Assembly (NCBI GenBank): GCA_002269645.1
Contig: NIVC01002706.1
Span: 1-64,000 of the forward strand
Reading direction: 5' to 3'
Length of the DNA: 64,000 bases
Origin: Macrostomum lignano
Lineage: Eukaryota
Shown here: in pieces, positions 3,748 to 62,741 of the stretch
Numbering within the stretch: position 1 is the first letter of the stretch
How the letters are laid out: every line of letters starts with the position of its first letter
The notes under the pieces: generated by a model
The model's input: only the letters and a program-made list of their open reading frames with translations
The model's database searches: none
Told to the model about the DNA's origin: nothing
Position numbers and translations under genes: made by a program

Positions 3748-3884
3748 GTCTGCAATAAATAGTAATTGGAGACAGACATTTACAGCACAGTGTAAGTATA
3801 TTCCCCTCTGGGAGCCCATTGTTTGAACTTGAAAACCATGCGAAGCAACAGAAATTAGCATTCAATATAATTTTGCCTATAATA

Positions 3885-13062: not shown

Positions 13063-32029
<18,967 letters not shown>

Positions 32030-38339: not shown

Positions 38340-39025
38340 CCATGATCAGCATTCTATATTCAGTGTGCTCATGATCAGCATTCTATATTCAGTGTGCTCA
38401 TGATCAGCATTCCATATTCAGTGTGCTCATGATCAGCATTCCATATTCAGTGTGCTCATGATCAGCATTCCATATTCAGTGTGCTCATGATCAGCATTCC
38501 ATATTCAGTGTGCTCATGATCAGCATTTTATATTCAGTGTGCTCATGATCAGCATTCCATATTCAGTGTGCTCATGATCAGCATTCTATATTCAGTGTGC
38601 TCATGATCAGCATTCCATATTCAGTGTGCTCATGATCAGCATTCCATATTCAGTGTGCTCATGATCAGCATTCTATATTCAGTGTGCTCATGATCAGCAT
38701 TCCATATTCAGTGTGCTCATGATCAGCATTCCATATTCAGTGTGCTCATGATCAGCATTCCATATTCAGTGTGCTCATGATCAGCATTTTATATTCAGTG
38801 TGCTCATGATCAGCATTCCATATTCAGTGTGCTCCTGATCAGCATTTTATATTCAGTGTGCTCATGATCAGCATTCCATATTCAGTGTGCTCATGATCAG
38901 CATTCCATATTCAGTGTGCTCATGATCAGCATTCTATATTCAGTGTGCTCATGATCAGCATTCTATATTCAGTGTGCTCATGATCAGCATTCCATATTCA
39001 GTGTGCTCATGATCAGCATTCCATA
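38340..39025. repeat. 29-bp minisatellite, ~23 copies
   Basis: Unit CATGATCAGCATTCCATATTCAGTGTGCT. Confidence 0.97.
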
Positions 39026-40054
39026 TTATTTTATGCTTGTTATGTTTGTGGTTGAAAGAATAGAATGGATTGCTAATCTAAGTCGGTATGGTTGAAGGAA
39101 TAGAATGAAGGCTGATAAGACTAATGTAATATTTGGAAGCAATTGTAAGTTAGATTTTCCTTCTGAATCTAGTTTACTAATTCGACAGGCTGAATTTAGA
39201 ATAAATATTTGCATTCTTTCAAAAAAACACAATTGAGCCATTAAAACTTGAAGCATCGATCAGCGCTTTCTCTTCCATACCAAAGTCAATTGGAATGCCA
39301 TTCAAGTGGATAATTCTTATTCTCTCGCCATTCGCTCAGGCAGTCAGTATCAAGATATCAGTTTGCATAGAGGACCTCAGGCTCTCTCGCTGGCTCCTAA
39401 CCTTCAGCCGGAGGAATTCAACATGCGGCATGCAAATTGAGGCGAAATACTGCTCTAGCCTTGGATAGCTTGGGCTGATTTAGAATAGGAAAGAGGACCA
39501 TGGGCAAACAGATTATCTCCACATGGTCGCGCCCCCTCCCCTGTCCCACTGACATGCTCTCCGGGGCGTGATCTCTGTCCCGCACCACCCCGCAGCCCTA
39601 CGGAGCGGCTGGAAGCTGCTGAACCCCCCCCCCCATCATCCGACCTTTATGGCCCGCTGGGAGCCTGGAGAGACGCGCTTTCATGCCCCACTTGTCAGCC
39701 CCCCCCCGGCCCACCCCACCCGCCAGTGAGGGGATGGGTCAGAGGTGGGCAAAGTGAGGCATCACCAAAAGCCCATTTGGCTTTTCATCCCTCTGATCCC
39801 TTGATCCGCTCGAGTGCAAACTCGGCCGATTCCCCATTCCAGTTTCTTAGAAATGCGCCTGCCCCACAGCCGGCGGGCTGGGCTAACTTTCAGCGCATGG
39901 GCTGCAATAGGCACAATAGGCATGGCTGACTAAACTAACAAATCAGGATGCATGAGAAAAAACAAATAACTCTTCGATACGCAAAAGTCTGGGAATACTA
40001 GTGAGAGAAGTGAGCATTAAATACAATTAGGCTGCTCGGCGCACATATTCTCAA

Positions 40055-42685
40055 TCAAACCGTGGCCTCGCTGAACTCAAAGTCCATCGCTTCATCTCCG
40101 TAGCGACGCTGCGGCGATCGAAAGGTGCTGAGCGTCGCGCAGGAGCCTCCGGGCTGGGCGCCAGACGCTGCCGACGCTGCCGCAGCCGCCGCCGCTGCGC
40201 TGACGCCGCCACAGAAGCTGCCGCAGTGTCTGGGCATCGTCAGAGTCTGTCGTAGTGGCCGGTGCATCGGACAGTGGCTGCTGCGCTGTCGGCTTGCTGC
40301 GAATCCACCGTACTGACTCCACGGGTTCTCATTGACGCCGCTCTCGTCCTCGTCCTGCTTGAAGCTGTCGACGATGCCCGCGGAGGCGGACAGCAGGCGG
40401 CGCGGGCTGGCGCAGGCCGAGTGCGACGAGGAATCCACCACGGCTCTGGCGGCTGCATCGGCAGCAGCGGCCACCCCATTGGCTGCGCACAGCGGCATCC
40501 GGTAGAACAGCTCGCGCCAGAAGCCGCGCCGGCCGTAGCGCAGAGCAACAGCGCGGGCTGCTGCGGCGCGTCCGCCGACGCCCAACAGGCCGGGCGGGAG
40601 CCGGTGAACACCGGGGAACAGGATGTGCACCAGGCGGCAGGCGCGGCGAGGTCGGGCTCGCGCGGCCAGGAAGTGAACAGCCAGCTGGTAGTCTGTGCAG
40701 GAATCCACGCTGGCTAAGAAGCTGTCGGTGACCACCGCCAGGACGCGCTTGCTGGACTCCACGGCGTGCCAGACGGCCGGGTAGGCGGGGACGCCGGGCA
40801 GCCGGGTGCGGTCGTGGGTGCACAGGGCGTAGGGCCGCGGCCGGCGGCGCAGCTTCTCTACTAGCACGGCGGCTACCCAGTCCGCATCGTCTGGGTGGAA
40901 CATGATAAACGCGTCGCAGGATTTGGCTTCGCCGGCGCACTCGTCCCTGTCGAAGGGGTGCAGGCCGCAGCTGGCGAACAGGCTGACCCGGCCGCAGAAG
41001 GCGGCCAAGAGGGCCATGGTAGCCAGGGCCAGGGCGGCGCTGATGGCGGACGAGCTGAGGGCCAGCCGGTCGTAGCCCCGGTTTGCCGGCCGCGGCTCCG
41101 GTAGGTCGCACAGGACGGCGGAGCTCAGCGACAGCAGGGATCGGTCGCGCAGGCGCGGCGGCTCGGCGCAGCGCACATCGTCAGGCGCCAGTAGCGTGTG
41201 GCGCAGGGCGCGCAGCCAGCCGGGCAGCCAGCTGGAGTTGCAGCCGCAGTGCCAGGGGTTTCTGTCCAGGCGGAGCCGGCGAAGCCGAGGAAACGACGTC
41301 CTGGCTAGTTCCGGGTCAAGCCGGGTGAGCAGATTGTGATGCAGCATGAGCTCTTCCAGGCTCTGCAGCTTGGCCAGGTAGCGGGCCGGCAGATCCTCGA
41401 GTCCGGTGCCGCTCAGGTCGAGACTGACGGCCTCGCGGAAGACCTTCGGCATGCCGGGCAGGCCGCGGCTGGCCAGTCGGCCGCCGCTGAAGTTGAACCG
41501 GTAGGCGTAGCCGCCGCTGACCGGGAGGGGCGGCAGCTCCCGCCAGTGCGGCAGACGGTCAAGCGTCACTCCGCGACAGTCAACAGACAGCGCCTGGCGC
41601 CACGGCTCTTCGGTGCAGCGGCAGCGCCCGGCGGCCGAGTCAAGGCAGGGCTGGCGCTGGCAGACGAGCTCCGCGGGCGCCAGGCCGGGCCGGAACTTGG
41701 CGCCAACCAGTGGACGACGGCCGCGCAACTCGGCGGGCTCGGCGCATTCGGGCAGCGCGGCTGAGCTTTCCAGCAGTGCGGCCAGCGGGGAGGTGCGCCC
41801 GCCGTCGGGATAGAGAAGCCGGAAGTCTTCGCAGTCGCAGTGCAGGGGATTTCCGGCCAGGCTGCTGATCAGTGGTCGCCAGTTTTCTGCCCGAGCCGGC
41901 GGCTGATTGTCGAGCAGGTGCCAGCCGCTGAGCAGGACGCCGAGGTGGCGGATGCCGTTGCCAACCAGGCTGATGTTGAGCCCAGCATCCGCCAGACGGC
42001 CCAGCATATAGGCCGGCCACCGCCGCTCAGCCGTGAACTGGCGCACCTGGTTGTGGTCGAGCAGCAGCCGCAGGCTCCGCCTGACGCCCGGCCGGTGTCC
42101 GGCCCGCTCAGCCAGCAGCAGAGGCCAGTCCGTCAGCTCGTCCAGCAGGTTGTGGCTGAGGTCAATCCGCGTCAGCTGATTGGCGGCGCTGCCAAACGCC
42201 GCCGCCGAGATGTTGGCCAGCCGGTTGCGCGCCAAGCTGAGCCGGCGCAGTCGAGGCGCCGCCAGCGACCCGTCGGCGAGGCTGTCGATTCTGTTGGCGT
42301 CGAGGACGAGGTCGCGCAGCTCGGCGAATCCGGCGAAGGCGCCGGCTGGCAGGCCTGTGACGTCGTTGCGGCTCAAGTTGAGGTAGATGAGGCGCGGCAG
42401 GCCGGACAGCTTGCTGAGCAGCCGGACAGCCGAGCGCACCCGGCGGATGATCAGCACATTGAGGTCGCCGCCAGCCAGGCAGTTCGTCAGAGGTGTCAGA
42501 GCGCCAGCGTCGGCAGCAAAAGCGCAGTCGAGCTCCAGATGGTGCTGGGCGAATGCGTAGCGGAAGCTGCAGACCGGACAGGCGGCCGGACAGAGCCGCC
42601 GGCAGTCGTCCAGGCCGCTGATCCTCCTGCAGAGCAGAGCAGCGGCCAGAAGCAGCAGCAGTGCGGAGGCCCTCGCACAGTGCAT
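40055..42685 (-). CDS. Toll-like receptor, multiple-cysteine-cluster (protostome) type, intronless, 876 aa
   Basis: In order: signal peptide (MHCARASALLLLLAAALLC); LRRNT; LRRs (LIYLNLSRNDV, LRDLVLDANRI, LRRLSLARNRL, LTRIDLSHNLL); LRRCT (GNPLHCDC); internal LRRNT; more LRRs; second LRRCT (RNPWHCGC...C); TM (ALSSSAISAALALATMALLAAFC); HPFDRDEC; TIR (box1 DAFIMF, box2 LCTHDRTRLPG, box3 GFWREL). Confidence 0.92.
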   Translation of the reverse strand: MHCARASALLLLLAAALLCRRISGLDDCRRLCPAACPVCSFRYAFAQHHLELDCAFAADAGALTPLTNCLAGGDLNVLIIRRVRSAVRLLSKLSGLPRLIYLNLSRNDVTGLPAGAFAGFAELRDLVLDANRIDSLADGSLAAPRLRRLSLARNRLANISAAAFGSAANQLTRIDLSHNLLDELTDWPLLLAERAGHRPGVRRSLRLLLDHNQVRQFTAERRWPAYMLGRLADAGLNISLVGNGIRHLGVLLSGWHLLDNQPPARAENWRPLISSLAGNPLHCDCEDFRLLYPDGGRTSPLAALLESSAALPECAEPAELRGRRPLVGAKFRPGLAPAELVCQRQPCLDSAAGRCRCTEEPWRQALSVDCRGVTLDRLPHWRELPPLPVSGGYAYRFNFSGGRLASRGLPGMPKVFREAVSLDLSGTGLEDLPARYLAKLQSLEELMLHHNLLTRLDPELARTSFPRLRRLRLDRNPWHCGCNSSWLPGWLRALRHTLLAPDDVRCAEPPRLRDRSLLSLSSAVLCDLPEPRPANRGYDRLALSSSAISAALALATMALLAAFCGRVSLFASCGLHPFDRDECAGEAKSCDAFIMFHPDDADWVAAVLVEKLRRRPRPYALCTHDRTRLPGVPAYPAVWHAVESSKRVLAVVTDSFLASVDSCTDYQLAVHFLAARARPRRACRLVHILFPGVHRLPPGLLGVGGRAAAARAVALRYGRRGFWRELFYRMPLCAANGVAAAADAAARAVVDSSSHSACASPRRLLSASAGIVDSFKQDEDESGVNENPWSQYGGFAASRQRSSHCPMHRPLRQTLTMPRHCGSFCGGVSAAAAAAAASAASGAQPGGSCATLSTFRSPQRRYGDEAMDFEFSEATV

Positions 42686-44211
42686 CTCTCAGAGCCGAGG
42701 CCTGCAGTCTAAGTTCCCATAGCCGCAAAGCCGCCAGACTGTCGCTTAGAGGTTGACGCGAGCGCATTTTTATAGAAATTTGACTGATCCGACAACTGCT
42801 AGCTCCGCGGCCACTGATTCCCATTGGCTGGCATCGGAGAGCGCAGAGCTGGGCCGACCGCCTCAAATCCCCTCTCCACAGTCCTCATTTTGTTTATCAG
42901 TTTGGCATGCCCGCTCCCGGCCCTCAATCATCAATTTTGAAGACTAAAATGACTGACTGGCTGGAGATGGCCTGACCAACAGCTGGGCATCTGCTCCCAC
43001 ACTTGTGTAAGAGCGTACAACCTCACCTGCGCGTGCGAAAACGCTGAGAGAGAGGGGGGATGGGCATTAGAAGAGTGAAGTATATCTACTGTTCATTGCC
43101 GGCCATACAAGCTTTGTAAAGCACTAACCGCTATCAATTATGCAACTACCTCTGGGGGTCCCTGAGGCCCTGCACAGTCTGCTTACTGACGCACACTGTC
43201 CCCACTTTACAACACAGTTGCCTGCCAAATTTGGAGTAAGCCAGCTGCCCCATTGCACCATTGCCCATTCCAATGCACTTTGATGCAGCGGGTCCCTAAG
43301 TGATTCTGAAATATTTTATGCTCTGGAAAATGATTTTAAATCCTTTTCGACTTTCTGTGCCTCTTTTTGGCCATCTTATGGGAGATTGTCTCGCTTATCA
43401 ACAACTCACTCTCGCTTCTGCACCTTTTATCGATCCCAATCCTCCCCTTGCCACTTCCGCTGCCCACTAATCTTTAATCTCGATAATATCAACTCCTCAA
43501 CAATTGCTTGAGCACCCTAGACACCCCACTTAACAAGGTGTGTCAGTTAAGATCTTCCAATTCCACTTTCAGAGTGTTTCAGCCCTGGCGTGCTTCATTC
43601 TGATAACAGATGCGGGCTATTTGATCCATGCGAAGGGGAAGACAGAGGGAAGGGATCGCAGAAATAGGTTTGCAGACCCCAGAGAGTTGGCCGCCCCAGG
43701 TACTGGAATTGAAAGTTTTTAAGGCCGGCACAGCGGCATACAGACACTGTATTTAAGGCTTAGGGAATGCAAGCGTATCGGAGGCTCAAATTTCTCACTG
43801 CGTGGCGCAGTTTTATCCACACACAACTTGGCGCCCAATGACAGATACAATTCCCCCCCCCCCTGAATGCTACACGGACTCAGCAGTGCACCTCCCACGG
43901 TGGGGAGCAGGGAGACAGACAAGGGAAGAACTCCGCTTTATCGACTGTCCCACAAGGGAGGGGACCGCGTGGGTTTGGGAATTGGAGCAGAAATCGACTC
44001 AGCAGCAGCATTAACTCTCACTCTCGACGATTACACCTTTTTACAATATCCTCACTGTGTCCCCGTTTCCCTTATAAAAGTTGAGGGATTTTTGGTCAAT
44101 ACTGCAGCCGGTGCAGCTAACGCTGCAGTTTGGGACTCTGCTTCACCTGATGCAAATACGAGTATATCGTATTATTTTATCGCGTCCAAGTTATAGGGTG
44201 ATAAAGCGAGG

Positions 44212-45020
44212 CTTCTCCGGTACAGATGTACCTCAGGTGCTTCTCCGCTACAGATGTACCTCAGGTGCTTCTCCGCTACAGATTAACCTCAGGTGCTTCT
44301 CAGCTACAGATTAACCTCAGGTGCTTCTCCGCTACAGATGTACCTCAGGTGCTTCTCCGCTACAGATGTACCTCAGGTGCTTCTCCGCTACAGATGTACC
44401 TCAGGTGCTTCTCCGCTACAGATTAACCTCAGGTGCTTCTCAGCTACAGATTAACCTCAGGTGCTTCTCCGCTACAGATGTACCTCAGGTGCTTCTCAGC
44501 TACAGATTAACCTCAGGTGCTTCTCCGCTACAGATGTACCTCAGGTGCTTCTCCGCTACAGATGTACCTCAGGTGCTTCTCCGCTACAGATGTACCTCAG
44601 GTGCTTCTCCGCTACAGATGTACTTCAGGTGCTTCTCCACTACAGATTAACCTCAGGTGCTTCTCCGCTACAGATGTACCTCAGGTGCTTCTCCACTACA
44701 GATGTACCTCAGGTGCTTCTCCGCTACAGATGTACCTCAGGTGCTTCTCCCCTACAGATGTACCTCAGGTGCTTCTCCACTACAGATGTACCTCAGGTGC
44801 TTCTCCGCTACAGATGTACCTCAGGTGCTTCTCCGCTACAGATGTACCTCAGGTGCTTCTCCGCTACAGATGTACCTCAGGTGCTTCTCCACTACAGATG
44901 TACCTCGGTTGCTTCTCCACTACAGATGTACCTCAGGTGCTTCTCCCCTACAGATGTACCTCAGGTGCTTCTCCACTACAGATGTACCTCAGGTGCTTCT
45001 CCGCTAAAAATGTACCTCAG
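44212..45020. repeat. 28-bp minisatellite, ~29 copies
   Basis: Unit CTACAGATGTACCTCAGGTGCTTCTCCG. Confidence 0.97.
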
Positions 45021-46674: not shown

Positions 46675-47372
46675 GCAGCAATCTAGACTGCGCAGCAATC
46701 AATTGCAATAATATGACACAGCAATCTAGACTGCGCAGCAATCAATTGCAATAATATGACACAGCAATCTAGACTGCGCAGCAATCAATTGCAATAATAT
46801 GACACAGCAATCTAGACTGCGCAGCAATCAATTGCAATAATATGACAAAGCAATCTAGACTGCGCAGAAATCAATTGCAATAATATGACACAGCAATCTA
46901 GACTGCGCAGCAATCAATTGCAATAATATGACAGCAATCTAGACTGCGCAGCAATCAATTGCAATAATATGACAAAACAATCTAGACTGCGCAGCAATGA
47001 ATTGCAATAATATGACACAGCAATCTAGACTGCGCAGCAATCAATTGCAATAATATGACACAGCAATCTAGACTGCGCAGCAATCAATTGCAATAATATG
47101 ACACAGCAATCTAGACTGCGCAGCAATCAATTGCAATAATATGACACAGCAATCTAGACTGCGCAGCAATCAATTGCAATAATATGACACAGCAATCTAG
47201 ACTGCGCAGCAATCAATTGCAATAATATGACACAGCAATCTAGACTGCGCAGCAATCAATTGCAATAATATGAAACAGCAATCTAGACTGCGCAGCAATC
47301 AATTGCAATAATATGACACAGCAATCTAGACTGCGCACCAATCAATTGCAATAATATGACACAGCAATCTAT
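46675..47372. repeat. 43-bp minisatellite, ~16 copies
   Basis: Unit GCAATCTAGACTGCGCAGCAATCAATTGCAATAATATGACACA. Confidence 0.97.
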
Positions 47373-47392: not shown

Positions 47393-47542
47393 GAGCCGAC
47401 TCCCCTGAGCAGGCACAAGCGCGTGGATACGTACGCAGTCATACGCACAGGCACACACTCACACAGGAGTGTACAGCGATTAACTTTATTAATCGTTAGG
47501 CATGTACACTTCACTGTGCCTTGGGGGTTGACCTTCAAGGGC
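47393..47542 (-). mobile_element. SINE family A, internal fragment
   Basis: Matches the body of the 15085-15426 copy; head and tail absent. Confidence 0.75.
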
Positions 47543-47989
47543 GCTGCGATTCCAAAATGCCCCTACTACTCGTAGTAGCATTCTAGCTCGAACTATATTA
47601 CACTGCCTCTAATGAATACGGAAAATGTAAATATTGAAATGAAAAAAATAAAATATTCATAAGCGCACCCTTCGCGAATGTTTAGCATCGCAGCAATTTT
47701 ATTGCATTTTCTTTCTTGGAATAATAATCGAAAATTAGCAGTCGAGCAGCTGCGCTACCAGATCCTGTAACCCAGTTAGACCGAGAGACTGCATGCAGCT
47801 CGAACGGCTATACAATATTATCCTCCTTATCAACCCAGTGCCCGTTGCAGCGAACATCAAACACAAGCAATCATTACAGAAAGTGTTCACTTTATTTAAC
47901 ACGTATTGAATTCACCAAACACATCAAAGCATTGCGCCATTTGAAAAATAAATTCTACGAGAAAATTAACAGCAGATGTAAGGACACTG

Positions 47990-48494: not shown

Positions 48495-48785
48495 AACCAT
48501 TGCGCACTTTAAGCCATTTCTGCCCATTCCGCCGACTCCCCTGAGCAGCGCACACAAGCGCGCGGATACGCACGCAGTCATACGCACAGGCACGCACTCA
48601 CACAGGAGTGCACAGCGGTCCTGACTATATATCGTTAGGCATGTACACTTCACTGTGCCTTGGGGTTTGGCCCTTCCAAGCCGATATTCAATTTAGCTCC
48701 AAAGCAATGTGACGGCACTTGATATCGAGCCTGGGCCGCTGGCACATCAGAGCGCCGCGCTAGACCACTGGGCTACGGCAGCCCT
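48495..48785 (-). mobile_element. tRNA-derived SINE, family A
   Basis: Head GTAGCCCAGTGGTCTAGCGCGGCGCTCTGATGTGCCAGCGGCCCAGGCTCGATATC plus body. Confidence 0.82.
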
Positions 48786-49289
48786 TGAAGAGGATGGACC
48801 GTCAGTGGACGTCAAAATCACAACTTTAACTTGTTATGCCTTGTTACTAACAATGATCATTGCAATACTTACAGTAGGTGCATCAGCAAAATTTTCCTTC
48901 CAAGTTTAGATGTCTATTAAAAGACCGCAATGCATTCAAATTCCAGTTTGCTTAACTTAGCTGTCAATCAATGGAGAATGTTTGATAATGTAATCATCTT
49001 ATTTTGGAATTTATTTGGCAATAGAGAAATATGATTAAACATAATTTTTATTGTCTCGGATTGTAAATGACCGCAACGCAAAACAAGTATGTACATTTGA
49101 AATACTGAAGTAGAATTAAATATTACTGTATTCTGTGCGGCTGAAATCCATGCAATTCACAGCATTGTAATAAATCAAGTTCCTAGCAACAATTGAATGC
49201 AAAAGCAACTGGGTCGCAGTCTCATTTGATGTTGAGAATGAGTAAGAAATTCTTCTTACTGACACAGATCTGAAAAACTGATGGAAGAC

Positions 49290-50520
49290 GCTAATTGGGA
49301 CTGTAGGATTCCTAATTGGGACTGTAGGATTCCTAATTGGGACTGTAGGATTCCTAATTGGGACTGTAGGATTCCTAATTGGGACTGTAGGGTTCCTAAT
49401 TGGGACTGTAGGATTCCTAATTGGGACTGTAGCATTCCTAATTGGGACTGTAGGATTCCTAATTGGGACTGTAGGATTCCTAATTGGGACTGTAGGATTG
49501 CTAATTGGGACTGTAGGATTCCTAATTGGGACTGTAGGGTTCCTAATTGGGACTGTAGGGTTCCTAATTGGGACTGTAGGGTTCCTAATTGGGACTGTAG
49601 GATTCCTAATTGGGACTGTAGGGTTCCTAATTGGGACTGTAGGGTTCCTAATTGGGACTGTAGGATTCCTAATTGGGACTGTAGGATTCCTAATTGGGAC
49701 TGTAGGATTCCTAATTGGGACTGTAGGATTCCTAATTGGGACTGTAGGATTCCTAATTGGGACTGTAGGATTCCTAATTGGGACTGTAGCATTCCTAATT
49801 GGGACTGTAGGATTCCTAATTGGGACTGTAGCATTCCTAATTGGGACTGTAGGATTGCTAATTGGGACTGTAGGATTCCTAATTGGGACTGTAGGATTCC
49901 TAATTGGGACTGTAGGATTCCTAATTGGGACTGTAGGATTCCTAATTGGGACTGTAGGATTCCTAATTGGGACTGTAGGGTTCCTAATTGGGACTGTAGG
50001 ATTCCTAATTGGGACTGTAGGGTTCCTAATTGGGACTGTAAGATTCCTAATTGGGACTGTAGGGTTCCTAATTGGGACTGTAGGGTTCCTAATTGGGACT
50101 GTAGGATTCCTAATTGGGACTGTAGGATTCCTAATTGGGACTGTAGGATTCCTAATTGGGACTGTAGCATTCCTAATTGGGACTGTAGGATTCCTAATTG
50201 GGACTGTAGCATTCCTAATTGGGACTGTAGGATTCCTAATTGGGACTGTAGGATTCCTAATTGGGACTGTAGCATTCCTAATTGGGACTGTAGGGTTCCT
50301 AATTGAGACTGTAGGATTCCTAATTGGGACTGTAGGATTCCTAATTGGGACTGTAGCATTCCTAATTGGGACTGTAGGATTCCTAATTGGGACTGTAGCA
50401 TTCCTAATTGGGACTGTAGGGTTCCTAATTGGGACTGTAGGGTTCCTAATTGGGGCTGTAGGATTCCTAATTGGGACTGTAGGATTCCTAATTGGGACTG
50501 TAGGATTCCTAATTGGGGCT
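49290..50520. repeat. 21-bp minisatellite, ~58 copies, just 3' of dysbindin
   Basis: Unit CCTAATTGGGACTGTAGGATT. Confidence 0.98.
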
Positions 50521-50637
50521 TTATGTAAACAAGGCAGTAAGACACTATAAAATTGATGACAAGCCACTCCACACAGCCGGCAGACGGTTAAAATTGTCTA
50601 ACAGATTCAAACCCAACTCCATCGCGAGTCCAAGCTG

Positions 50638-52863
50638 TCACTCCTGAGGCGCTGCCTGAGATGAGTCGTCGGCGTCGGCGGCAGGAAACACCGGCGATCT
50701 GACGTCATCGTCATCATCCTCTTCGTCGTCGAGTTCGACAGCCGCATCGGCGTCAACATCGTCAGGATCTTCGCCGACATCTTCGTCATCGTCGTTCGCT
50801 TCAAGAAATTTGTCCAACGCCTCGGCGGCGTCGTCCAGCGGCGGCGGCGGCAGCAGATCGGCGGCGTCGGCCAGAGAAGCCGGGGTATCCTGACCGCCGC
50901 CGCCGCTACCGACGCTGCCGGCTCCGCCTCCGCCGCCACCGCCGCTGCTGCTGACGCTCGGCGCCCGCTCAGTGTGGCCGTGCTCCTTGAAGAACTGCAT
51001 GTCCCGCTGGAACTCCTGAGAAATTGGATGGAGAAGGGTTCGGTGAAGACACAGCGAACGAATGCCAAGTGAAGCCTTAAGCCTAATTATATTTAGCTTA
51101 TAGCCAGGGGTTTTATTCTAGTAGAACTCTCGACGGAAAGGTCGGGGGTTCGATTCCCAATCCTACTTGGAACAATCTGTGTCCTTAAGCAAGACACTTA
51201 ACTCTGCATTGCTGCAGTTCACCCAGCTGTAAAGTTAGGGTGTGTGTGCGGCGAACCCCCAGTCCTTGGACTGAACAGCCGTACGCAGCCTTCAGATGCG
51301 CCGTGCAATAGCTGCGGCTGAGCTGTCGGTTGCACATGTGGCTCCATTAGGGCAGGCGTAATAAATTATTACAGTATTATTATTTATTATCACCTGTTCA
51401 AAAGCGCGCTGCCTTTCCAACAGGGCGGCCTGTCGAGACTGTTCCAACGCTCTGACCCGGCCGGCGTGGCGCTGGGCCATCTGCACCCGGCGCCGTTCCA
51501 GCTCCTCTGATCGGCGCCTACTGTGCTCCAACAGCTGGTAGTTGTGAGCGTGCTGGTCCCGGCGCAGCTGCACCCACTCGGCCTGAATGACGGCAAAGTG
51601 TTCATTCTAATTGATTGATTGATGCATGAACTCCAATGTTTGTAATGCGTTTATGTTTATGCAAATGTTTATAATAATTTTTATCAAGTGGCAGATTCTG
51701 GGATAATTAAGTGCGGTGATTCTTGAGTGACAATGACAACTTTGGAGTGACAAGTTTGAAGTGATTCTCGAGTGACAAGTTTGAAGTGATTCTCGAGTGA
51801 CAAGTTTGGAGTGATTCTGGAGTGACAAGTTTGGAGTGATTCTTGAGTGACAAGTTTTGAGGCGATTCTTGAGTGACAAGTTTTGAGGCAATTCTTGAGT
51901 GACAAGTTTTGGGGCGATTCTTGAGTGACAAGTTTTGAGGCGATTCTCGAGTGACAAGTTTTGAGGCGATCCTCGAGTGACAAGTTTTGAGGCGATTCTT
52001 GAGTGACAAGTTTTGAGGCGATTCTTGAGTGACAAGTTTGGAGTGATTCTTGAGTGACAAGTTTTGAGGCGATTCTCGAGTGACAAGTTTTAAGGCGATT
52101 CTTGAGTGACAAGTTTTGAGGCGATTCTTGAGTGACAAGTTTTGAGGCGATTCTTGAGGGACAAGTTAGGACTGATTCATGTGTGACATCTTTGGAGTGA
52201 TTTTTAGTGACAAGGTGCCAATTAGGGTGATCCGATATAGATTTTTAAGTGATAATTTGGAACGATTCTGTTTTGAATTACAATTCTGTAGAGCCGCTCG
52301 TCAGTAAGTGAGTAACTGCAACCTTACCTGATTCTCCAGCAGCGCCAGTTCATGCTCAACCTCGCGGCAGCTCTGCTCCAAGCTGTCTAGCAGGGCTCCG
52401 ATGCACTCCAGACTGGCCAGGGTTCGCGGCAGGTCGCAGGCCTCGCGCTGCAGGGCCGTCCAGGCGGCGGCGCGGGAACGCGCTCGGCCGGACACCACGG
52501 CGGCCAGGCGGCCGACTCGATCAACGGAGCGGCCGACTTCGTCGCTGCCGCGGTGAATCTCCGACCAGTGGCGCTGGTAGGCGGCCAGCAGGTCAGCGCC
52601 AGGCAGCAGGCAGCCAGCGGATTGGGCGCGCAGATGCTGGGGATCTTGCCTGGGAAAGATTAGAAATCTCAATCAGGGATGAGCAGTGCTGCCTGATATT
52701 GAAGCTAATAAAATAAGCAAAACTTCACTCACTTGTCATCAGCAATGTGTTTGAGCGAACTGTCAAATGAGGCGCTAGCTTTCACTTTGAGTTGGCTCAG
52801 ATTTTGATTGATGTCTTCTGACACCTCGGATAACTTTTTGCCAAGGTTGCGTAGAAAATTCAT
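50638..52863 (-). CDS. DTNBP1: Dysbindin (BLOC-1 subunit); exons 52863-52733, 52649-52328, 51582-51394, 51015-50638 (339 aa)
   Basis: MNFLRNLGKKLSEVSEDI; GADLLAAYQRHWSEIH; LPRTLASLECIGALLDSLEQSCREVEHELALLEN; ALLERQRAFEQEFQRDM; AEALDKFL; acidic tail. These are colinear with the human dysbindin motifs as I recall them. GT-AG junctions are phase-consistent (131+322+189+378 = 1020 nt). Confidence 0.9.
51135..51390 (+). mobile_element. CORE-type SINE in dysbindin intron 3
   Basis: B box GGTTCGATTCC, then GTGTCCTTAAGCAAGACACTTAACTC...CACCCAGCTGTAAA and an AT-rich tail; matches the 3885 and 20868 copies. Confidence 0.8.
51715..52165. repeat. 24-26-bp minisatellite in dysbindin intron 2
   Basis: Unit GAGTGACAAGTTTTGAGGCGATTCTT / shorter TTTGGAGTGATT variant. 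Confidence 0.94.
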
Positions 52864-54319: not shown

Positions 54320-55099
54320 GGCAATCCTGAAGATTCCCGTGTTTAATTATTTTACACATTTTTATGCACATTTCAGCCACGGAATTATGGCAGGGCGACC
54401 TCCAGCACCCCAGACAATTGTGGATCCTCAAGAAGTTAGACTGACTATTGAACTAGCTGAACTTAGCATCAACCATTGTGAATTGAGGGCTCTAACTGAT
54501 GAGACAGGCATCCAGTGGCTGGCCAAGTATGGGCTGCTGCGAAATAGCATGGACTATGAGCACTGCCCCAACAGGCCTATGTCATTCCAAAGGCAGGCTG
54601 GTTGAGACTATGTGGATGGTGTCTGCTGGAGCTGCAAGACTTGCCGCCAACATTGGTCAATTCGGTGTGGCTCCTTCTTCCAAGGCAGTCACCTGTCACT
54701 TGTTCAGTTGATCAACATGATCTACTTCTGGTCAATGAACAGCCACCTGTCCACTGTGGTTGAAGAGACGAGCCAGCGAACACTCCGTGATTGATTGGTT
54801 CAACTATATCCGTGACATCTGTGCCCAGTACCTCATCGACCACCCGACACAGCTTGGTGGGCCCGGAGTGGACGTTGAGATCAATGAGGTGAATGAGTCC
54901 AAATTCATACATCGCAAGTACCACAAGGGGCAGTACCGTGAAGGCCACTGGGTGCTGGGCATGGTGGAGAGAGGCACTCATCGATGCATTCTCATTCCTG
55001 TGCCAGACCGTTCAGCCAACACCCTGCTGCCAGTGATCAACCAGCATGTGCTGGTAAAATTCCGTAAAATAATTAAACGCGGGAATCTTCAGAATTGCC
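54320..55099 (+). mobile_element. Merlin (IS1016/ISXO2-like) DNA transposon, internally deleted, transposase pseudogenised
   Basis: ~35-bp TIRs GGCAATCCTGAAGATTCCCGTGTTTAATTATTTTA and its inverse; flanks CAAATACA / CAAATATG (6 of 8 match). Transposase remnant from ATG 54387: WSCKTC...SIRCGSFF, LGGPGVDVEINE..SKF..RKYHKG...GHWVLGMVERG...PVPDRSANTLLPVI. It has a stop, a frameshift and no C-terminal catalytic part. Confidence 0.9.
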
Positions 55100-55744
55100 C
55101 AAATATGACATTGTCATTGACTTCTTTTGTCTTTGAGTCATAAATATCAGCTACGCATTTTTAAGCATGTCTGAACTTTTAAATGAAGCCTTCGTGGGCA
55201 CTTTGCACTTAAAATGACAAGAAATTTGCCTAATATATTATATATTTACTTAAAAGCAAAGTTTATATCAAGATCTGACTATAAGCATAGTTGAATTGAA
55301 CATGTAAACTTGATTGAATCTTGAATGTGAACGAAAAAAAGTCAATAACCTCTCTTGACTCTGAGTCAACTCTTTTGACAAAGTCGGTTTACCTTGTCCT
55401 TAGGCCTACCATAGATTTTTGACAAATTCGTTTACATTGTTGACTGAGGTACTTTTCGTAGAAAAGAAGAATTTTGTATATATACCCTTTTCGATTATAG
55501 CAAACTTACGTCTAAAATAAAACTATATTTTAAAAAAAATACAAAAAAACGTACCAAAAATAAGTTTTTTAAGTTTTCAGTTCCAATTTTTCTAAATTGT
55601 CGCACTTGCGTCTGCTAACTTGCTTTCACACTTCGAATCAGGTTCTTCGGTAAGGCCGCGCCGCGCCGCCTCTAGTTGAACTTCAAGATCGTGCTCCCGA
55701 GGGCTAGGCCCTAACGCCTGAAGGGTAAAGCGGATTTTAATAAT

Positions 55745-57903
55745 GGTACCCGGTAAAATGCGGAATCCGCAACGGAATCGGAATGGAATAGTACGGTAAA
55801 ACGCGGAATCCGCAGCGGAATGGTAAACTGCGGAACGAAGTGCGGATTCCGCATATTAAAGTAAAATGCGGAATGCGAAAATGAAAAAAGTAAAATGCAG
55901 AATGAAAACTAACTGAATTATACTTTTATTCATCAACATCAACATGTACTAAAGACTACAAATAGCTATCTAGCTACATGTATATATAGCTTAATTTATT
56001 TAGAAGCTGATTTTTTGTAGTGTCAAATAAAGTTTCTATCATCGGAATGTATATTAACAACATATTGTGCAGTTTTTAAAAATAAGTATACGCTAAAAAT
56101 ACAGAAATAAATTTTTTTGCAAGAAATGTTTAAATATTCCATTTGCCTATCTTGCAAATGCATTCGGAAGTGTTACCATGATGCTCACTTGCGCTAGGCT
56201 TCCGCGCCAGTTTATCACAATATATCATGATATTAAAAAGTGCTTATGCATGGACCTGGCCTGATTTCCAAGTGCCAAAATGTGCTATAAGGGAACCTAA
56301 CGTACAAGCAAAACCCTTTCCTGGACATCCTTTTTGATGCGACCAACTATTAACAGCTAATTTTCTAAATGTACTGTTTGATTGAATCTATGCATTAACT
56401 TTTCTGTGGACAAAGCCCACGAGATTAAGTTCTGAAGAGGGTTTACAGGCGACAACAACCCGCTTTACGGGTGTGCGGGTAGAGCCTCTATGTGACTATG
56501 ACCCGAAACAACAGCCCAGCAGTTGATTTGTGTCCTTAGAAGTAAGCACTATTTGCAGGCATAGATTAATAAAGTTAACAAAAAGGTTGCGATAAAAACA
56601 ATGCCCATTTTTGTAATAGTTACTCTGGAACCCGATGTGCAACTATAAATATAAACGTATGCCCAGATTGATAATTTCCATACTATGACTTGACTTCGCG
56701 ATTCAAACACTGCATCAACATTACAATTCGGGGAGTCGAATTTCTTGGGTTTGTCCTCCAGTGGAGGAGTTCCACTCGTTATACCTAACTTTCTATTGCC
56801 TAGAGAAGTCACTATATTTGATTTATCTGATTCATACCCCCAAGCAGTGGTTAATTCAATAGAATAGAATGAAGGGATTGTTATGCAAGTGAGAAATCAA
56901 ATAATTTTATACATTTTCTTATATATTTACTAGCAAAATAGAGCCCCAATAATAAATAATCAAGCACTTATTCGTTAGCGATTTGCTGTCCCGTCGCTGG
57001 CGAAAAGTCGCTGGCGAAACTTTGCTAATGTTCCGCGGACGATTCGCCAATGCGACCGAGGTGGAAAAACTATGATTTATGCTGCAGGAAGAAAAGTTCC
57101 AGACAAACACAGCTTTTTGAAACGTTCTATATGGGAAATGAAGAAAAAAAAATGTCGCCACTACTTCGCTGTCTCGCTGACAATTCGCTTGCGATTCGCC
57201 GGCGATTTTCCCAGAGGGTACTGACCTTCCATACTGATCTGACTGATCTGACTTTCCATGCTTCCTTGTACTATTTATTGCCTTTCTTGACACTAAAAAC
57301 GTAAAAGCGTCTTGCAAATCGTAATTTTAGCTTTGCTAAAATCTATCTTGTCCTAAAGTTTCGGATATAATTTTTTTTTTTAGAAATGCACATTTAATGC
57401 TACGATTTTTTTTGACAGCAATAGGATGTAGGATGACTTCTCGCCACATGTCAGCGGGCACTTTTGAAATACATTAAATATAAAAATTGTACGTAGTATG
57501 CACTTTCGCTTCCAGAGTATGAATTTACCTTAAATAAGTTGCCAAAGCTCTATCTTCATTCCAAAAATTACTGTATCTTAACCATTCTGCTGAGGATTTT
57601 GCTAAGGGAAGATCAACGACAACAGATTTGATTTGAGTGTCATAGTGACAATGAAAAAAAATTTGTTCAGCAAAAATGTACATAAATTTCAGATGTTTTT
57701 TTAAATATAAGGTGATGAATAAAAGTATAATTCAGTTAGTTTTCATTCCGCATTTTACTTTTTTCATTTTCGCATTCCGCGTTTTACTTTAATATGCGGA
57801 ATCTGCACTTCGTTCCGCAGTTTACCATTCCGCTGCGGATTCCGCGTTTTACCGTACTATTCCATTCCGATTCCGTTGCGGATTCCGCATTTTACCGGGT
57901 ACC
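55745..57903. mobile_element. Non-autonomous element with ~190-bp TIRs and a 9-bp TSD (Mutator/Foldback-like)
   Basis: TTTAATAAT|GGTACCCGGTAAAATGCGGAAT... at the left and ...ATTCCGCATTTTACCGGGTACC|TTTAATAAT at the right. TIRs are built from GCGGAAT subrepeats. No recognisable transposase inside. Confidence 0.88.
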
Positions 57904-59656
57904 TTTAATAATTTCTATTGGGGTATAAATTATACGGCCAAGTCGGCCATATCCAATATTTACCATGTTTAATGACCGCTCAGACTGTAAAGGGGCAATC
58001 GAATTTTTGTTTGAATACCTTACTTGTTTAAAGTCCATGTCCCAAATAATGGTCCAACTCAACCCAATATAATATTAGCTTATTAGGCCCTAATAACTAG
58101 GCCTAGTAGAGTTCATGACATGATATTATTAATATATTAATCATGTATAGCAATCATATAGGCTTACAATAGTATATAAGTTAAATATTCTAAATTATTA
58201 GGCAATTAAGACTAGGCCTAAGTATACAAAGACCCAAAAATAAGCCTAATTTAATTAGGCCTTTTCCATTTTAAAATGGCAGTTGCAGGGTTGTAACTTC
58301 TGGGGTTATTTTTCCAGTTACTGGATAAATAGCCACATTCCACTATTCATCTGGTTAGGCCTAATACTAGATAAATAAGCATTTTGTTTTTTGTCCAGTT
58401 AAATTATTGCAGTTGTTATTGTTATGGTGACCATATAGATAACAAAATTATTATTTTTACGGTTAACGCATAAGACACTATCTGGGCCTGGCTATGGTCT
58501 TTACTTAATATAATCATATAAATAACAAAACTGTTATTTTTACGGTCACCATAGGTAGGCCCCCCCTAGAAAGCAAAATGGCTATTTTTATAGTCATGTG
58601 GAAGAAATTTCAATTAAATTACAATGTAAATTTAACCATCATAGGCCTAGTATTTGAATAGCAAGTTTGTCACTTTATTTAGATGGTATTTTTTTAAGTA
58701 TTAGGTGTAACCATAAAAATAACCATCCTGCCAATAACCAATTGATATAATACTAATTATATCAATTTTATAGTGAATATTTAGGACTTTAAAGATTCTT
58801 ACTCAAATTTTATTATTATGTTGTTATACCAGAGTAGGGCCTATGTTTCATAACTATGATCACTTTTTAACTTAAATTTTTTGCTAACAATAACATGACT
58901 AATGAGAAAAATATTTTAAAGCAAGTATAGGTCTAATCTTATACTCATGATTCTATGAGCTTTGCTTACATTAGTGAGACGGCTATAATAAAATATTTAT
59001 CTGGATACAAGAAAAGGTCTTAAAAATTCAAAATATTTATCACTAAACAAATAAACACTTGTGTTAACACTTTAACCAGACAAAAAAAGAAAATGGCTTT
59101 AAGTTGCATTTTAATTTTTTCTCTATTCAATTTACAATATAAATTATATTCAAAATAAATTGTAAAGTAGGTTAAACTTTCTCTTTAAATCCTAATTACT
59201 ATCACCAAATTTCAAGTTATAGTAGGGGTTTTATTAATTTTATAAAGCCAATTAATTGAAGGCAACTTATTATTAACTCCAAAGTTTTTTGTCAAAATGC
59301 CAAGTGCTGTCCCAATTGAGCGCAAAGTCTAGCAGCGTACACAACTGCTGGCCAGTGTGGCAGAACACACAGGGATTGACATAAAATGAGCGCAAAACTT
59401 TCTCCTCATTGAGGGCAGTGGTGAAGTCTACCCTGGCGTCTGTCTTGCCTGCCAGCCACAGCTTATGTCTGCTAGGCTGCATGCCGGGGCCAGGTGCAGC
59501 TGCAAAATAGAACCCTCGACATTGGGCTATAGCCAGCCCTCCCGGCCCTCTCTAGGGCAAATGACCTGGTGATGTGGTATAGGTTTTGTGGGTCCAATCA
59601 TGTAATGTGCCTTTTGATAGCCCTGAGGTGCCTGGAAAAAAAATTTTTTGTGCAGT

Positions 59657-62640: not shown

Positions 62641-62741
62641 GTAACCGCTCAGTTATTTGTCGTACTAAGGTTTACGTCTAACTCTTATTCCTCGACCCTT
62701 CGGTTTTAAGGCTTGAAAGCACTTTTCCTTCTTTAATGTCC

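What the first reader, a model, noticed from the sequence alone, without database searches (positions are those of the whole stretch)
40055..42685. Complete intronless multiple-cysteine-cluster Toll-like receptor in what looks like a flatworm genome
Seen: one 876-aa ORF with signal peptide, two LRR blocks separated by an LRRCT/LRRNT cluster, a TM segment and a TIR domain. It has the same GC-rich, poly-Ala style as neighbouring host genes and is flanked by the same minisatellite and SINE landscape, which argues against contamination. Established: LRR-TM-TIR with an internal cysteine cluster defines P-type/mcc TLRs, and as I recall canonical TLRs are reported absent from the surveyed Platyhelminthes. 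Inference: if the host is Macrostomum-like, this is a retained TLR that would revise the claimed loss in flatworms. High GC and a divergent TIR could have hidden it from surveys.
Basis: partly seen in the sequence, partly recalled or inferred. Interest (0 to 1): 0.82.

Follow-up and report, generated by a model that had tools for sequence, protein, structure and literature searches.

The report
Canonical Toll-like receptor in a flatworm
An intact, intronless gene for a complete Toll-like receptor sits among ordinary host genes in what is almost certainly a Macrostomum-like flatworm genome, although published surveys report that flatworms have lost all such receptors.

Summary
Window 40055-42685 (minus strand) is one 876-aa ORF. 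It encodes a signal peptide, LRRNT, about 7 LRRs, LRRCT, LRRNT, about 4 LRRs, LRRCT, one TM helix, a TIR domain and a 146-aa low-complexity tail.

Pfam TIR passes its gathering score. An MSA-based AlphaFold model is confident (pLDDT 88), and its best PDB matches are the multiple-cysteine-cluster (mcc) receptors Drosophila Toll, Aedes Toll5A and C. elegans TOL-1.

The protein aligns end to end, in the same order, with a subfamily of short intronless mcc TLRs. The only named members are annelid. It shares their juxtamembrane signature HPFDRDECxGE and 58 of 73 highly conserved positions, at only about 25% overall identity.

Host evidence:
- The neighbouring NSD gene's best match is Macrostomum lignano.
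- NSD exons and an interspersed repeat match an M. lignano contig at 73-88% DNA identity.
- Codon usage and amino-acid bias match the neighbouring host exons.

No protein more than 37% identical exists among about 15 billion public proteins. Three surveys (2021-2023) report no TLR in Platyhelminthes, M. lignano included.

This is a new member of a known kind, and it contradicts a phylum-wide loss. Expression, read-level contiguity, exact species and signalling partners were not testable here.

The parts
40055..42685 (-). Complete intronless coding sequence of the Toll-like receptor (876 aa plus stop codon)
   Evidence: ORF list; 876 codons against a maximum of 517 in 500 shuffles; collinear full-length alignment with short mcc TLRs
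42767..42827 (-). Putative core promoter: CCAAT box (42823-42827) and TATAAAA box (42768-42774), about 90 nt upstream of the ATG
   Evidence: Read directly from the sequence; function is inferred and not tested
42689..42691 (-). In-frame TGA 6 nt upstream of the ATG, which closes the reading frame at the N-terminus
   Evidence: Sequence
42614..42685 (-). Signal peptide, aa 1-24 (MHCARASALLLLLAAALLCRRISG)
   Evidence: Kyte-Doolittle peak at the N-terminus; not tested with SignalP
42476..42610 (-). N-terminal cysteine cap (LRRNT-1), aa 26-70, with C32, C36 and C54 invariant in the family
41855..42475 (-). LRR block 1, aa 71-277, about 7 repeats; asparagine ladder N107, N131, N154, N179, N212, N243
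   Evidence: Pfam LRR_8/LRR_4; motif scan; conserved columns
41657..41854 (-). Internal LRRCT-1, aa 278-343 (NPLHCDC...C314...C342)
   Evidence: C283, D284, C285, C314, P317 and C342 invariant in alignment A1
41573..41650 (-). Internal LRRNT-2, aa 346-371 (C347, C355xC357, C370)
   Evidence: together with LRRCT-1 this defines the mcc type
41261..41572 (-). LRR block 2, aa 372-475, about 4 repeats
   Evidence: aligned with the last LRRs of TLR3
41105..41260 (-). Membrane-proximal LRRCT-2, aa 476-527 (NPWHCGC...C506...C526)
   Evidence: Weak Pfam LRRCT hit; invariant N476, W478, C480, C482, W490, C506, C526
40988..41065 (-). Single transmembrane helix, aa 541-566
   Evidence: Only internal hydrophobic peak; AlphaFold helix 537-564
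40928..40960 (-). Juxtamembrane subfamily signature HPFDRDECAGE, aa 576-586
   Evidence: Invariant F578, D581, E582, C583, G585, E586 in A1. The motif occurs in 76 of the 150 best relatives, including the annelid TLRs. It is absent from the vertebrate, arthropod, nematode and amphioxus TLRs checked
40496..40924 (-). TIR domain, aa 588-730. Box 1 is CDAFIMF (590-596), box 2 is HDRTRLPG (624-631), box 3 is GFW (720-722)
   Evidence: Pfam TIR above gathering score. Best PDB sequence matches are the TIR domains of TLR15, TLR2, MyD88 and TLR7. The AlphaFold model shows a five-strand, five-helix fold with pLDDT 79-97
40058..40495 (-). C-terminal low-complexity tail, aa 731-876, with a poly-Ala run; no counterpart in relatives
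   Evidence: Alignment A1; translation

Best explanation
This is a genuine, endogenous, protein-coding gene of a Macrostomum-like free-living flatworm. It encodes a canonical type-I transmembrane Toll-like receptor of the multiple-cysteine-cluster (mcc, 'P-type') kind. It belongs to a subfamily of short, intronless mcc TLRs otherwise named only from annelids.

Shown here: the complete LRR-TM-TIR architecture, the Toll-like fold of the ectodomain, a complete TIR fold, retention of the family's structural residues, host-like composition, and location between host genes.

Inferred mechanism, from what is established for Drosophila Toll, Toll5A and vertebrate TLRs: the glycosylated LRR ectodomain binds an extracellular ligand. 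That ligand is either a Spaetzle-like cystine-knot protein or a microbial molecule. Binding brings two receptor chains together. The paired cytoplasmic TIR domains then nucleate a TIR-domain adaptor of MyD88 or SARM type, which activates downstream kinases.

Evolutionary consequence: TLR loss in flatworms was not complete at the base of the phylum. At least one macrostomorphan lineage keeps one.
For: ORF integrity: 876 codons, z of about 9 against shuffles, with an in-frame stop just upstream of the ATG and a CCAAT/TATA pair.

Domains: LRR_8 7.5e-25; TIR above the gathering score.

Collinearity across the LRR-LRRCT-TM-TIR junction: aa 406-664 align with TLR3 residues 571-828. aa 13-732 align with residues 20-693 of a 737-aa TLR at E=9e-62.

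Family alignment: all four cysteine clusters, the juxtamembrane FDxDECxGE motif, box 1 and the SKR motif are invariant. The window's protein keeps 58 of 73 columns that are at least 80% conserved among 76 relatives, despite about 25% overall identity. That pattern argues for purifying selection rather than decay.

Structure: pLDDT 88.1, pTM 0.67. The best PDB matches are Drosophila Toll-Spaetzle (E=1.3e-13), Aedes Toll5A and C. elegans TOL-1, then vertebrate TLRs. The TIR alone matches the TIR domains of TLR15, TLR2 and MyD88.

Host: NSD best hit is M. lignano, E=5e-60. DNA-level matches to M. lignano contig NIVC01000782.1 cover NSD exons (73-77%) and a dispersed repeat (74-88%). RSCU r is 0.75-0.80. 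GARP is 0.39 against 0.35-0.44 in host exons and 0.14-0.22 in TLR relatives. CpG observed/expected is about 1.0, as in host exons. Copies of the same dispersed repeats lie 5-9 kb from the TLR and also next to NSD and KCNN.

Uniqueness: no protein more than 37% identical among 1.84 billion representatives of about 15 billion proteins; nothing close in the word-indexed search.
Against: No expression data are available. Read-level support for the assembly cannot be checked.

Box 2 of the TIR reads RTRLPG where the family has RDFxPG. The D-to-T and F-to-R changes are at columns conserved in 84% and 95% of relatives, although the BB-loop Pro-Gly is kept. Adaptor binding could therefore be altered.

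GC3 of the TLR (0.83) is somewhat higher than in the neighbouring exons (0.63-0.78).

The ectodomain has only about 11 LRRs, which is short for a TLR, although it is typical of this subfamily.

Whether MyD88, IRAK/Pelle, NF-kB or a Spaetzle-like ligand exist in this genome is unknown. Reports for planarians disagree on MyD88 (PMC7958881 against PMC13563047).

The species is not identified. The host assignment rests on one gene and shared repeats.
Confidence: 0.8

Rival explanations
1. The gene is real and endogenous, but it is not an immune MyD88/NF-kB receptor. It acts instead as a developmental or neuronal cell-surface receptor, like C. elegans TOL-1 (which binds latrophilin) or Drosophila Toll-6/7/8. 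It would signal through SARM-type or other partners, or mainly through adhesion.
For: TOL-1 ectodomain bound to the LAT-1 lectin domain is among the best structural matches. The best full-length named arthropod hit is Nasonia Toll-6. Box 2 of the TIR is altered to RTR in place of RDF. It is a single copy with no expansion in the window. Planarian surveys report partial or absent canonical pathway components (PMC13563047). PMC8609888 documents developmental expression of protostome TLRs.
Against: Nothing in the sequence discriminates immune from developmental use. The BB-loop Pro-Gly, box 1 and box 3, which are needed for TIR-TIR assembly, are intact.
Confidence: 0.35
2. The ORF is a recently inactivated or never-expressed relic. 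It remains open only because the GC-rich sequence has few stop codons.
For: At 70% GC, long ORFs arise easily: other frames of the same region hold ORFs of up to 290 aa, and shuffles reach 517 codons. There are no expression data. The C-terminal tail is low-complexity.
Against: The 876 codons exceed every one of 500 shuffles. 58 of 73 highly conserved family positions are retained at about 25% overall identity, including every structural cysteine and the LRR asparagine ladder. The signal peptide and start context are intact, with a TATA box. GC3 (0.83) is well above GC2 (0.55), the periodicity expected of a coding sequence.
Confidence: 0.1
3. The TLR segment does not belong to the flatworm. 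It is a contaminant, or an assembly chimera joined through the surrounding minisatellites.
For: The gene is bracketed by minisatellite arrays (38341-39027 and 44211-45020), which can cause misjoins. M. lignano is reported to lack TLRs (PMC8609888). The TLR's GC3 is the highest in the window.
Against: Codon usage, GARP bias and CpG ratio match the host exons and differ strongly from every known relative. The closest proteins anywhere are only 24-37% identical, so no plausible donor is known. Dispersed repeats 5-9 kb upstream of the TLR (47395-47543, 48531-48672, 51138-51371) recur beside NSD and KCNN, and one family recurs in the M. lignano contig. Host genes lie on both sides: KCNN to about 27 kb and SUCLG2 from 62.3 kb.
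Confidence: 0.06
4. The architecture arose independently in this lineage by fusion of an LRR-only gene with a TIR-only gene. Both kinds are known in flatworms. On this view it is not a retained ancestral TLR.
For: Flatworms possess TIR-only and LRR-only 'TLR-like' proteins (PMC7958881, PMC6043800).
Against: Homology to other TLRs runs uninterrupted across LRR block 2, LRRCT, TM, the juxtamembrane motif and TIR. The subfamily-specific juxtamembrane motif HPFDRDECxGE sits exactly at the supposed fusion point and is shared with annelid TLRs.
Confidence: 0.03

Closest known systems
Annelid short mcc TLRs: Arenicola marina 'Toll-like receptor 13' (UCK81512.1, 756 aa) and Paralvinella palmiformis KAK2163172.1 (761 aa), plus many unnamed relatives on eukaryotic contigs in metagenomes
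   Same: Collinear over the whole length. They share LRRNT, about 7 LRRs, LRRCT, LRRNT, about 4 LRRs, LRRCT, TM, the juxtamembrane FDxDECxGE motif and TIR. Core size is similar (about 735 aa here, 650-760 aa there). Relatives whose loci were fetched are also single-exon.
   Different: Only 24-29% identical, whereas other members are 29-44% identical to each other. Amino-acid composition is strongly GC-driven (GARP 0.39 against 0.14-0.22). Box 2 is RTR in place of RDF. There is an extra 146-aa low-complexity C-terminal tail. The host phylum is one reported to lack TLRs.
Drosophila Toll, Aedes Toll5A and C. elegans TOL-1 (mcc/P-type TLRs, clade alpha)
   Same: These are the best structural matches to the model (4lxs/4lxr, 7b1c, 8suf). 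They share the principle of two LRR blocks split by an LRRCT/LRRNT cluster, a single TM and a C-terminal TIR.
   Different: The ectodomain here is much shorter (about 520 aa and about 11 LRRs, against about 800 aa). Sequence identity is 15-21%. They lack the FDxDECxGE juxtamembrane motif, as checked in Nasonia Toll-6, Pollicipes Toll-like and a Panagrolaimus TIR protein. Clade-alpha membership of the flatworm gene is inferred from PMC10279657, which places all mcc TLRs in clade alpha. It was not tested by a tree here.
Mollusc 'SPP-type' short mcc TLRs (nomenclature of Gerdol 2017, used in PMC10279657)
   Same: Short mcc architecture with a single TIR.
   Different: No mollusc sequence was compared directly here, so any relationship is by description only.
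Flatworm 'TLR-like' proteins (TIR-only and LRR-only proteins of Schmidtea mediterranea)
   Same: Same phylum, and the same domain types (PMC7958881, PMC6043800).
   Different: Those proteins never combine LRR, TM and TIR in one chain. In S. mediterranea, 20 TIR proteins were found and none is linked to LRRs (PMC7958881). This ORF combines all three.

Membership tests
Toll-like receptor (criteria of PMC8609888: TIR + TM + at least one LRR in one protein) | Extracellular leucine-rich repeats | tested here: met
   Pfam LRR_8 E=7.5e-25, LRR_4 E=3.1e-18, LRR_1 E=7e-07; LRR solenoid in the model
Toll-like receptor (criteria of PMC8609888: TIR + TM + at least one LRR in one protein) | Single transmembrane segment between the LRRs and the TIR | tested here: met
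   One internal hydrophobic peak at aa 541-566; predicted helix 537-564. TMHMM was not available.
Toll-like receptor (criteria of PMC8609888: TIR + TM + at least one LRR in one protein) | Cytoplasmic TIR domain | tested here: met
   PF01582 scores 24.5 bits (whole protein) and 28.5 bits (isolated domain) against a gathering score of 21.3. TIR_2 scores 22-26 bits, below its cut-off of 28. PDB phmmer: TLR15/TLR2 TIR at 3.8e-09, plus MyD88 and TLR7. Complete five-strand, five-helix fold at pLDDT 79-97.
Toll-like receptor (criteria of PMC8609888: TIR + TM + at least one LRR in one protein) | N-terminal signal peptide (type-I topology) | tested here: inconclusive
   Hydrophobic N-terminus aa 1-24, and all five NxS/T sites lie N-terminal to the TM. 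No dedicated signal-peptide predictor was available.
mcc / P-type TLR | At least two LRRCT modules, with an LRRNT interrupting the LRR array | tested here: met
   CxC...C...C clusters at 283/285/314/342 and 480/482/506/526, with an internal C...CxC...C cluster at 347/355/357/370. All are invariant in the family alignment. The best structural matches are mcc Tolls. Caveat: the Pfam LRRCT model gives only E=0.037, and only for the second cluster.
Short mcc TLR subfamily with the juxtamembrane FDxDECxGE motif (annelid TLR13-like) | Full-length collinearity and the signature motif between the TM and box 1 | tested here: met
   aa 13-732 align with residues 20-693 of P0055, E=9e-62. HPFDRDECAGE lies at 576-586. 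The motif occurs in 76 of the 150 best relatives and is absent from the non-subfamily TLRs checked.
Metazoan TLR clade alpha (PMC8609888, PMC10279657) | Placement within clade alpha in a TIR or full-length phylogeny with the reference data set | not tested
   Inferred only from the statement that all mcc TLRs fall in clade alpha. A TIR-only neighbour-joining attempt was uninformative: distances were 0.75-0.79 to everything and few references carried names.
Signalling-competent TLR TIR domain | Boxes 1, 2 and 3, including the BB-loop proline | tested here: inconclusive
   Box 1 D591 and F593 are kept. BB-loop P630 and G631 are kept. Box 3 F721 and W722 are kept. However, box 2 reads R626-T627-R628 where 84-95% of relatives have R-D-F.
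Signalling-competent TLR TIR domain | Presence of MyD88/IRAK/TRAF6/NF-kB and a ligand such as Spaetzle in the same genome | not testable with these tools
   Only a 64-kb window is available, and none of these genes lies in it.
Host = Platyhelminthes, Macrostomorpha | Flanking host genes are closest to Macrostomum | tested here: met
   NSD exon: M. lignano at E=5e-60, 34% identity over 100% of the query, then Protopolystoma. blastn to M. lignano NIVC01000782.1: NSD exons 73-77%, dispersed repeat 74-88%. Only one host gene could be searched by name. The 34% identity means this is a different species or an unannotated paralog.
Host = Platyhelminthes, Macrostomorpha | The TLR is physically contiguous with the host genes (reads, depth) | not testable with these tools
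   Indirect support only: host-like codon and amino-acid bias, and repeat families shared on both sides.

The most novel reading that the evidence does not exclude
Flatworms did not lose Toll-like receptors at the base of the phylum. At least the macrostomorphan lineage retains a functional, vertically inherited, fast-evolving short mcc TLR orthologous to annelid TLRs. The absences reported in planarians, tapeworms, flukes and perhaps M. lignano would then be later, independent losses, or in free-living species an artefact of annotation-based surveys. This would give a genetically tractable flatworm in which TLR function can be tested in a stem-cell-based regenerating animal.
Probability: 0.6. 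Interest if true: 0.7.

Novelty: new member of a known kind. Interest (0 to 1): 0.62.

Why it matters
Three independent surveys conclude that Platyhelminthes have no canonical TLR. They are PMC8609888 (2021), PMC10279657 (2023, 85 metazoan genomes) and the review PMC7958881. PMC8609888 uses the absence in M. lignano, an early-branching lineage, to argue for loss early in flatworm evolution. PMC10279657 even ties the loss to parasitism.

A canonical LRR-TM-TIR gene in a free-living macrostomid contradicts a single basal loss. It also shifts the reconstruction of TLR evolution in non-trochozoan Spiralia.

Macrostomum species are experimentally tractable: RNAi and transgenesis are established in M. 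lignano, as far as I recall. The question of how flatworms sense microbes without TLRs therefore becomes testable in a relative that has one.

The gene itself is an ordinary TLR in mechanism. The interest is phylogenetic and comparative-immunological, not mechanistic.

Tried and rejected
- Single-sequence AlphaFold gave a useless model (pLDDT 36.6). It was replaced by a run with a 77-sequence alignment.
- A TIR-only neighbour-joining tree was uninformative. The flatworm TIR is roughly equally distant (0.75-0.79) from all relatives, and almost no neighbours carry names. No clade assignment is claimed.
Only Paralvinella, Arenicola and Branchiostoma carried organism names. The rest are unnamed metagenome, Logan or unannotated-assembly proteins.
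- The best full-length relative, P0055, comes from NCBI assembly GCA_029979725.1. I could not identify its organism, and a literature search for the accession found nothing.
- Synteny with M. lignano could be examined only within 10 kb of its NSD gene. Neither an SK channel nor a TLR lies in that stretch. The region equivalent to the TLR, about 36 kb away, was out of reach, so presence or absence of an M. lignano ortholog remains open.
- An exact-sequence look-up of the ORF found no record. Rfam and tRNA scans of the window found nothing.
- The large ORFs at 8824-10155 and 49116-50567 were considered as possible genes. They were rejected as translated minisatellites with no Pfam hit.
- Retrogene origin was considered. 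There is no poly(A) remnant downstream, and relatives in other phyla are also single-exon. Intronlessness is therefore a family trait, not evidence of retroposition.


Full report
**1. The observation**

The window holds a single 876-aa ORF at 40055-42685 on the minus strand, starting with ATG. The region is 69-71% GC, so long ORFs are cheap there. Other frames of the same stretch carry ORFs of up to 290 aa. Dinucleotide-preserving shuffles of the 2631 nt give a longest stop-free run of 292 +/- 65 codons, with a maximum of 517 in 500 shuffles. The observed 876 codons lie far outside that range.

An in-frame TGA sits 6 nt upstream of the ATG. A CCAAT box (42823-42827) and a TATAAAA box (42768-42774) lie about 90-140 nt upstream. 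The reading frame is therefore complete at its 5' end within one exon.

**2. Domain anatomy**

Pfam finds the following:
- LRR_8, E=7.5e-25.
- LRR_4, E=3e-18.
- A weak membrane-proximal LRRCT hit, E=0.037.
- The TIR domain PF01582 at 24.5 bits in the whole protein and 28.5 bits on the isolated domain, against a gathering score of 21.3.

Hydropathy shows only two hydrophobic segments, aa 1-24 and about 541-566. All five N-glycosylation sequons lie between them.

The cysteines form four clusters:
- 28/32/36/39/54/69, the LRRNT.
- 283/285/314/342, a CxC...C...C LRRCT.
- 347/355/357/370, an internal LRRNT.
- 480/482/506/526, the membrane-proximal LRRCT.

This is the multiple-cysteine-cluster (mcc, P-type) layout defined in PMC8609888.

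The TIR has box 1 (CDAFIMF, 590-596), the BB-loop Pro-Gly (630-631) and box 3 (GFW, 720-722). Box 2 reads RTR where relatives have RDF.

**3. Homology is continuous across the domain junctions**

Against PDB sequences the best hit is TLR3 (E=1e-22). One alignment runs from the last LRRs through LRRCT, TM and half of the TIR, covering aa 406-664 against residues 571-828. The TIR alone best matches the TIR domains of TLR15, TLR2, MyD88 and TLR7.

I ran an exhaustive HMMER search with the LRRCT-TM-TIR segment (aa 480-730) against 1.84 billion representatives of about 15 billion proteins. It found 581 relatives. Almost all align from residue 1 of the query onward. None is more than 37% identical, and none scores better than E=4e-24.

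Full-length BLASTP against these hits gives end-to-end, collinear alignments. For example, aa 13-732 align with residues 20-693 of a 737-aa protein at E=9e-62.

**4. A defined subfamily**

In the multiple alignment with eight of these proteins (A1), the following are invariant:
- All four cysteine clusters.
- The LRR asparagines.
- A juxtamembrane motif, HPFDRDECxGE.
- Box 1, and an SKR motif in the TIR.

The juxtamembrane motif occurs in 76 of the 150 best relatives. These include the only named members: Arenicola marina 'Toll-like receptor 13' (UCK81512.1) and a Paralvinella palmiformis TIR protein (KAK2163172.1). The motif is absent from the vertebrate, lamprey, amphioxus, barnacle, wasp and nematode TLRs at hand.

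Members are 650-760 aa long. Those whose loci I fetched are single-exon.

Members share 29-44% identity with one another, but only 24-29% with the window's protein. Even so, the window's protein keeps the consensus residue in 58 of the 73 columns that are at least 80% conserved among 76 relatives. Two of the 15 differences are one- to four-residue shifts of a cysteine (C347 for C351, C663 for C662). This pattern is what purifying selection on a fast-evolving, compositionally skewed protein would leave. It is not what a decaying pseudogene would show.

**5. Structure**

Without an alignment, AlphaFold failed (pLDDT 36.6). With the 77-sequence alignment, the model of aa 1-735 has mean pLDDT 88.1 and pTM 0.67. 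Only the stalk at 531-541 is uncertain. The model shows a TM helix at 537-564 and a complete five-strand, five-helix TIR.

Foldseek against the PDB ranks the Drosophila Toll-Spaetzle complex first (4lxs/4lxr, E=1.3e-13, TM 0.37-0.40 over about 520 columns). Aedes Toll5A and C. elegans TOL-1 follow. All three are mcc receptors. Vertebrate TLR5, 7, 8 and 9 come after them.

**6. Whose genome is it?**

Neighbouring genes:
- An NSD-type histone methyltransferase exon (2068-3861, minus strand; PWWP plus NSD PHD fingers).
- An SK/KCNN potassium channel (exons at 12883-14270 and 21263-21934, plus strand).
- The first exon of succinyl-CoA ligase beta (62335-62652, plus strand).
These are supported.

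The NSD exon's best match among 5.8 billion proteins is Macrostomum lignano BOX15_Mlig028383g3 (E=5e-60, 34% identity, full coverage). Next is the monogenean Protopolystoma.

I fetched the M. lignano locus (NIVC01000782.1) and compared it at the DNA level. Three NSD exon segments match at 73-77% identity. A dispersed repeat of about 210 nt, present three times in the window (3880-4094, 20883-21091, 51138-51371), matches at 74-88%.

The host is therefore a fairly close relative of M. lignano. It is not M. lignano's annotated NSD locus. Unannotated assemblies of other Macrostomum species exist (PMC10468722).

**7. Is the TLR part of that genome?**

Codon usage correlates with the NSD and SK exons (RSCU r = 0.80 and 0.75).

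| Measure | TLR | Host exons in the window | TLR relatives elsewhere |
|---|---|---|---|
| Gly/Ala/Arg/Pro (GARP) fraction | 0.39 | 0.35 (NSD), 0.44 (SK exon 1); 0.34 in M. lignano NSD | 0.14-0.22 |
| CpG observed/expected | 1.0 | 1.05-1.13 | not measured |
| GC3 | 0.83 | 0.63-0.78 | not measured |

A SINE-like repeat of about 150 nt lies at 47395-47543 and 48531-48672, about 5-6 kb upstream of the TLR. It recurs beside NSD (1759-1911) and KCNN (15165-15315) at 88-91% identity.

No plausible donor exists, because the closest proteins anywhere are under 30% identical over the full length. Contamination or chimerism is therefore unlikely. Minisatellites bracket the gene, and read-level evidence could not be examined.

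**8. What is known**

- PMC8609888 screened predicted proteins with TIR and LRR HMMs. It found no TLR in M. lignano, Echinococcus or Hymenolepis. It cites earlier absences in Schmidtea and Schistosoma and proposes loss early in flatworm evolution.
[quoted passage not shown] It places all mcc TLRs in clade alpha.
- PMC7958881 and PMC6043800 describe only TIR-only and LRR-only proteins in planarians.
- I found no paper in the held library that reports a canonical flatworm TLR.
- The ORF, or anything close to it, is absent from the protein collections.

**9. Mechanism**

Shown: a secreted, glycosylatable LRR ectodomain of Toll type, one TM helix, and a complete TIR with the BB-loop Pro-Gly.

Inferred from the established behaviour of Toll, Toll5A and vertebrate TLRs: ligand-induced dimerisation brings the TIR domains together, and they nucleate a TIR adaptor.

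The sequence cannot decide two questions. One is whether the ligand is a Spaetzle-like protein, a microbial molecule or a cell-surface partner (as for TOL-1 and latrophilin). The other is whether the output is immune or developmental. The RTR-for-RDF change in box 2 is the one feature that might alter adaptor choice.

**10. Verdict**

The gene is a new member of a known kind: a short mcc TLR of the annelid-like subfamily. Its interest lies in where it is found.

Still open: the species, expression, assembly contiguity, whether M. lignano has an ortholog, and formal clade placement.

Noticed in passing
window 30000-52000 and throughout (e.g. 38341-39027, 44211-45020, 46676-47371, 49291-50517, 8655-9719): Minisatellite density is extraordinary: at least 20 arrays in 22 kb, with units of 13-45 nt and up to 58 copies. 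Several arrays translate into spurious long ORFs with no Pfam hit (e.g. 49116-50567, 483 aa; 8824-10155, 443 aa).
   Followed up: partly
window 1759-1911 (-), 15165-15315, 47395-47543, 48531-48672: A dispersed SINE-like repeat of about 150 nt has four copies at 88-91% identity, lying beside NSD, beside KCNN and upstream of the TLR. It has no tRNA or Rfam match, so its origin is unknown.
   Followed up: partly
window 3880-4094, 20883-21091, 51138-51371; L001 6070-6367: A second dispersed repeat of about 210 nt is shared with Macrostomum lignano contig NIVC01000782.1 at 74-88% identity. In M. lignano it lies inside an annotated 1875-aa 'gene', which may therefore be a mis-annotation or a transposable element.
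   Followed up: no
window 54339-55143 (+) and 55737-55935 / 57713-57911: There is a fragment of an ISXO2-like (DDE_Tnp_IS1595) transposase, at 23.7 bits and below the gathering score. Just downstream is a pair of 199-nt inverted repeats, 97% complementary and 1.8 kb apart. This is probably a decayed DNA transposon or a MITE-like element.
   Followed up: partly
window 12883-14622 and 62257-63934: In both the SK-channel gene and the SUCLG2 gene, the first coding exon runs directly into a minisatellite, with a 14-nt unit from 14274 and a 34-nt unit from 62583. The mechanical ORFs therefore read on into repeat-encoded peptide. The first introns seem to begin with tandem arrays.
   Followed up: no
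window 13060-14200 (+): The N-terminal exon of the SK channel is dominated by poly-Ala and poly-Gly tracts and acidic runs (GARP 0.44). This is the same GC-driven low-complexity style seen in the TLR's C-terminal tail.
   Followed up: no
L002 (GCA_029979725.1), L003 (ERZ25767047), L004 (ERZ28675667), L005 (SRR30767268): The short mcc TLR subfamily with the juxtamembrane FDxDECxGE motif is common on eukaryotic contigs hidden in ENA/JGI metagenome assemblies and in Logan assemblies. It is single-exon there too. Only annelid members carry names, so its taxonomic range is essentially uncharted.
   Followed up: partly
window 39630-39710 and 43850-43860 (minus-strand reading): G-runs of 9-11 nt flank the TLR gene on both sides, within otherwise unique sequence. 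Their significance is unknown.
   Followed up: no
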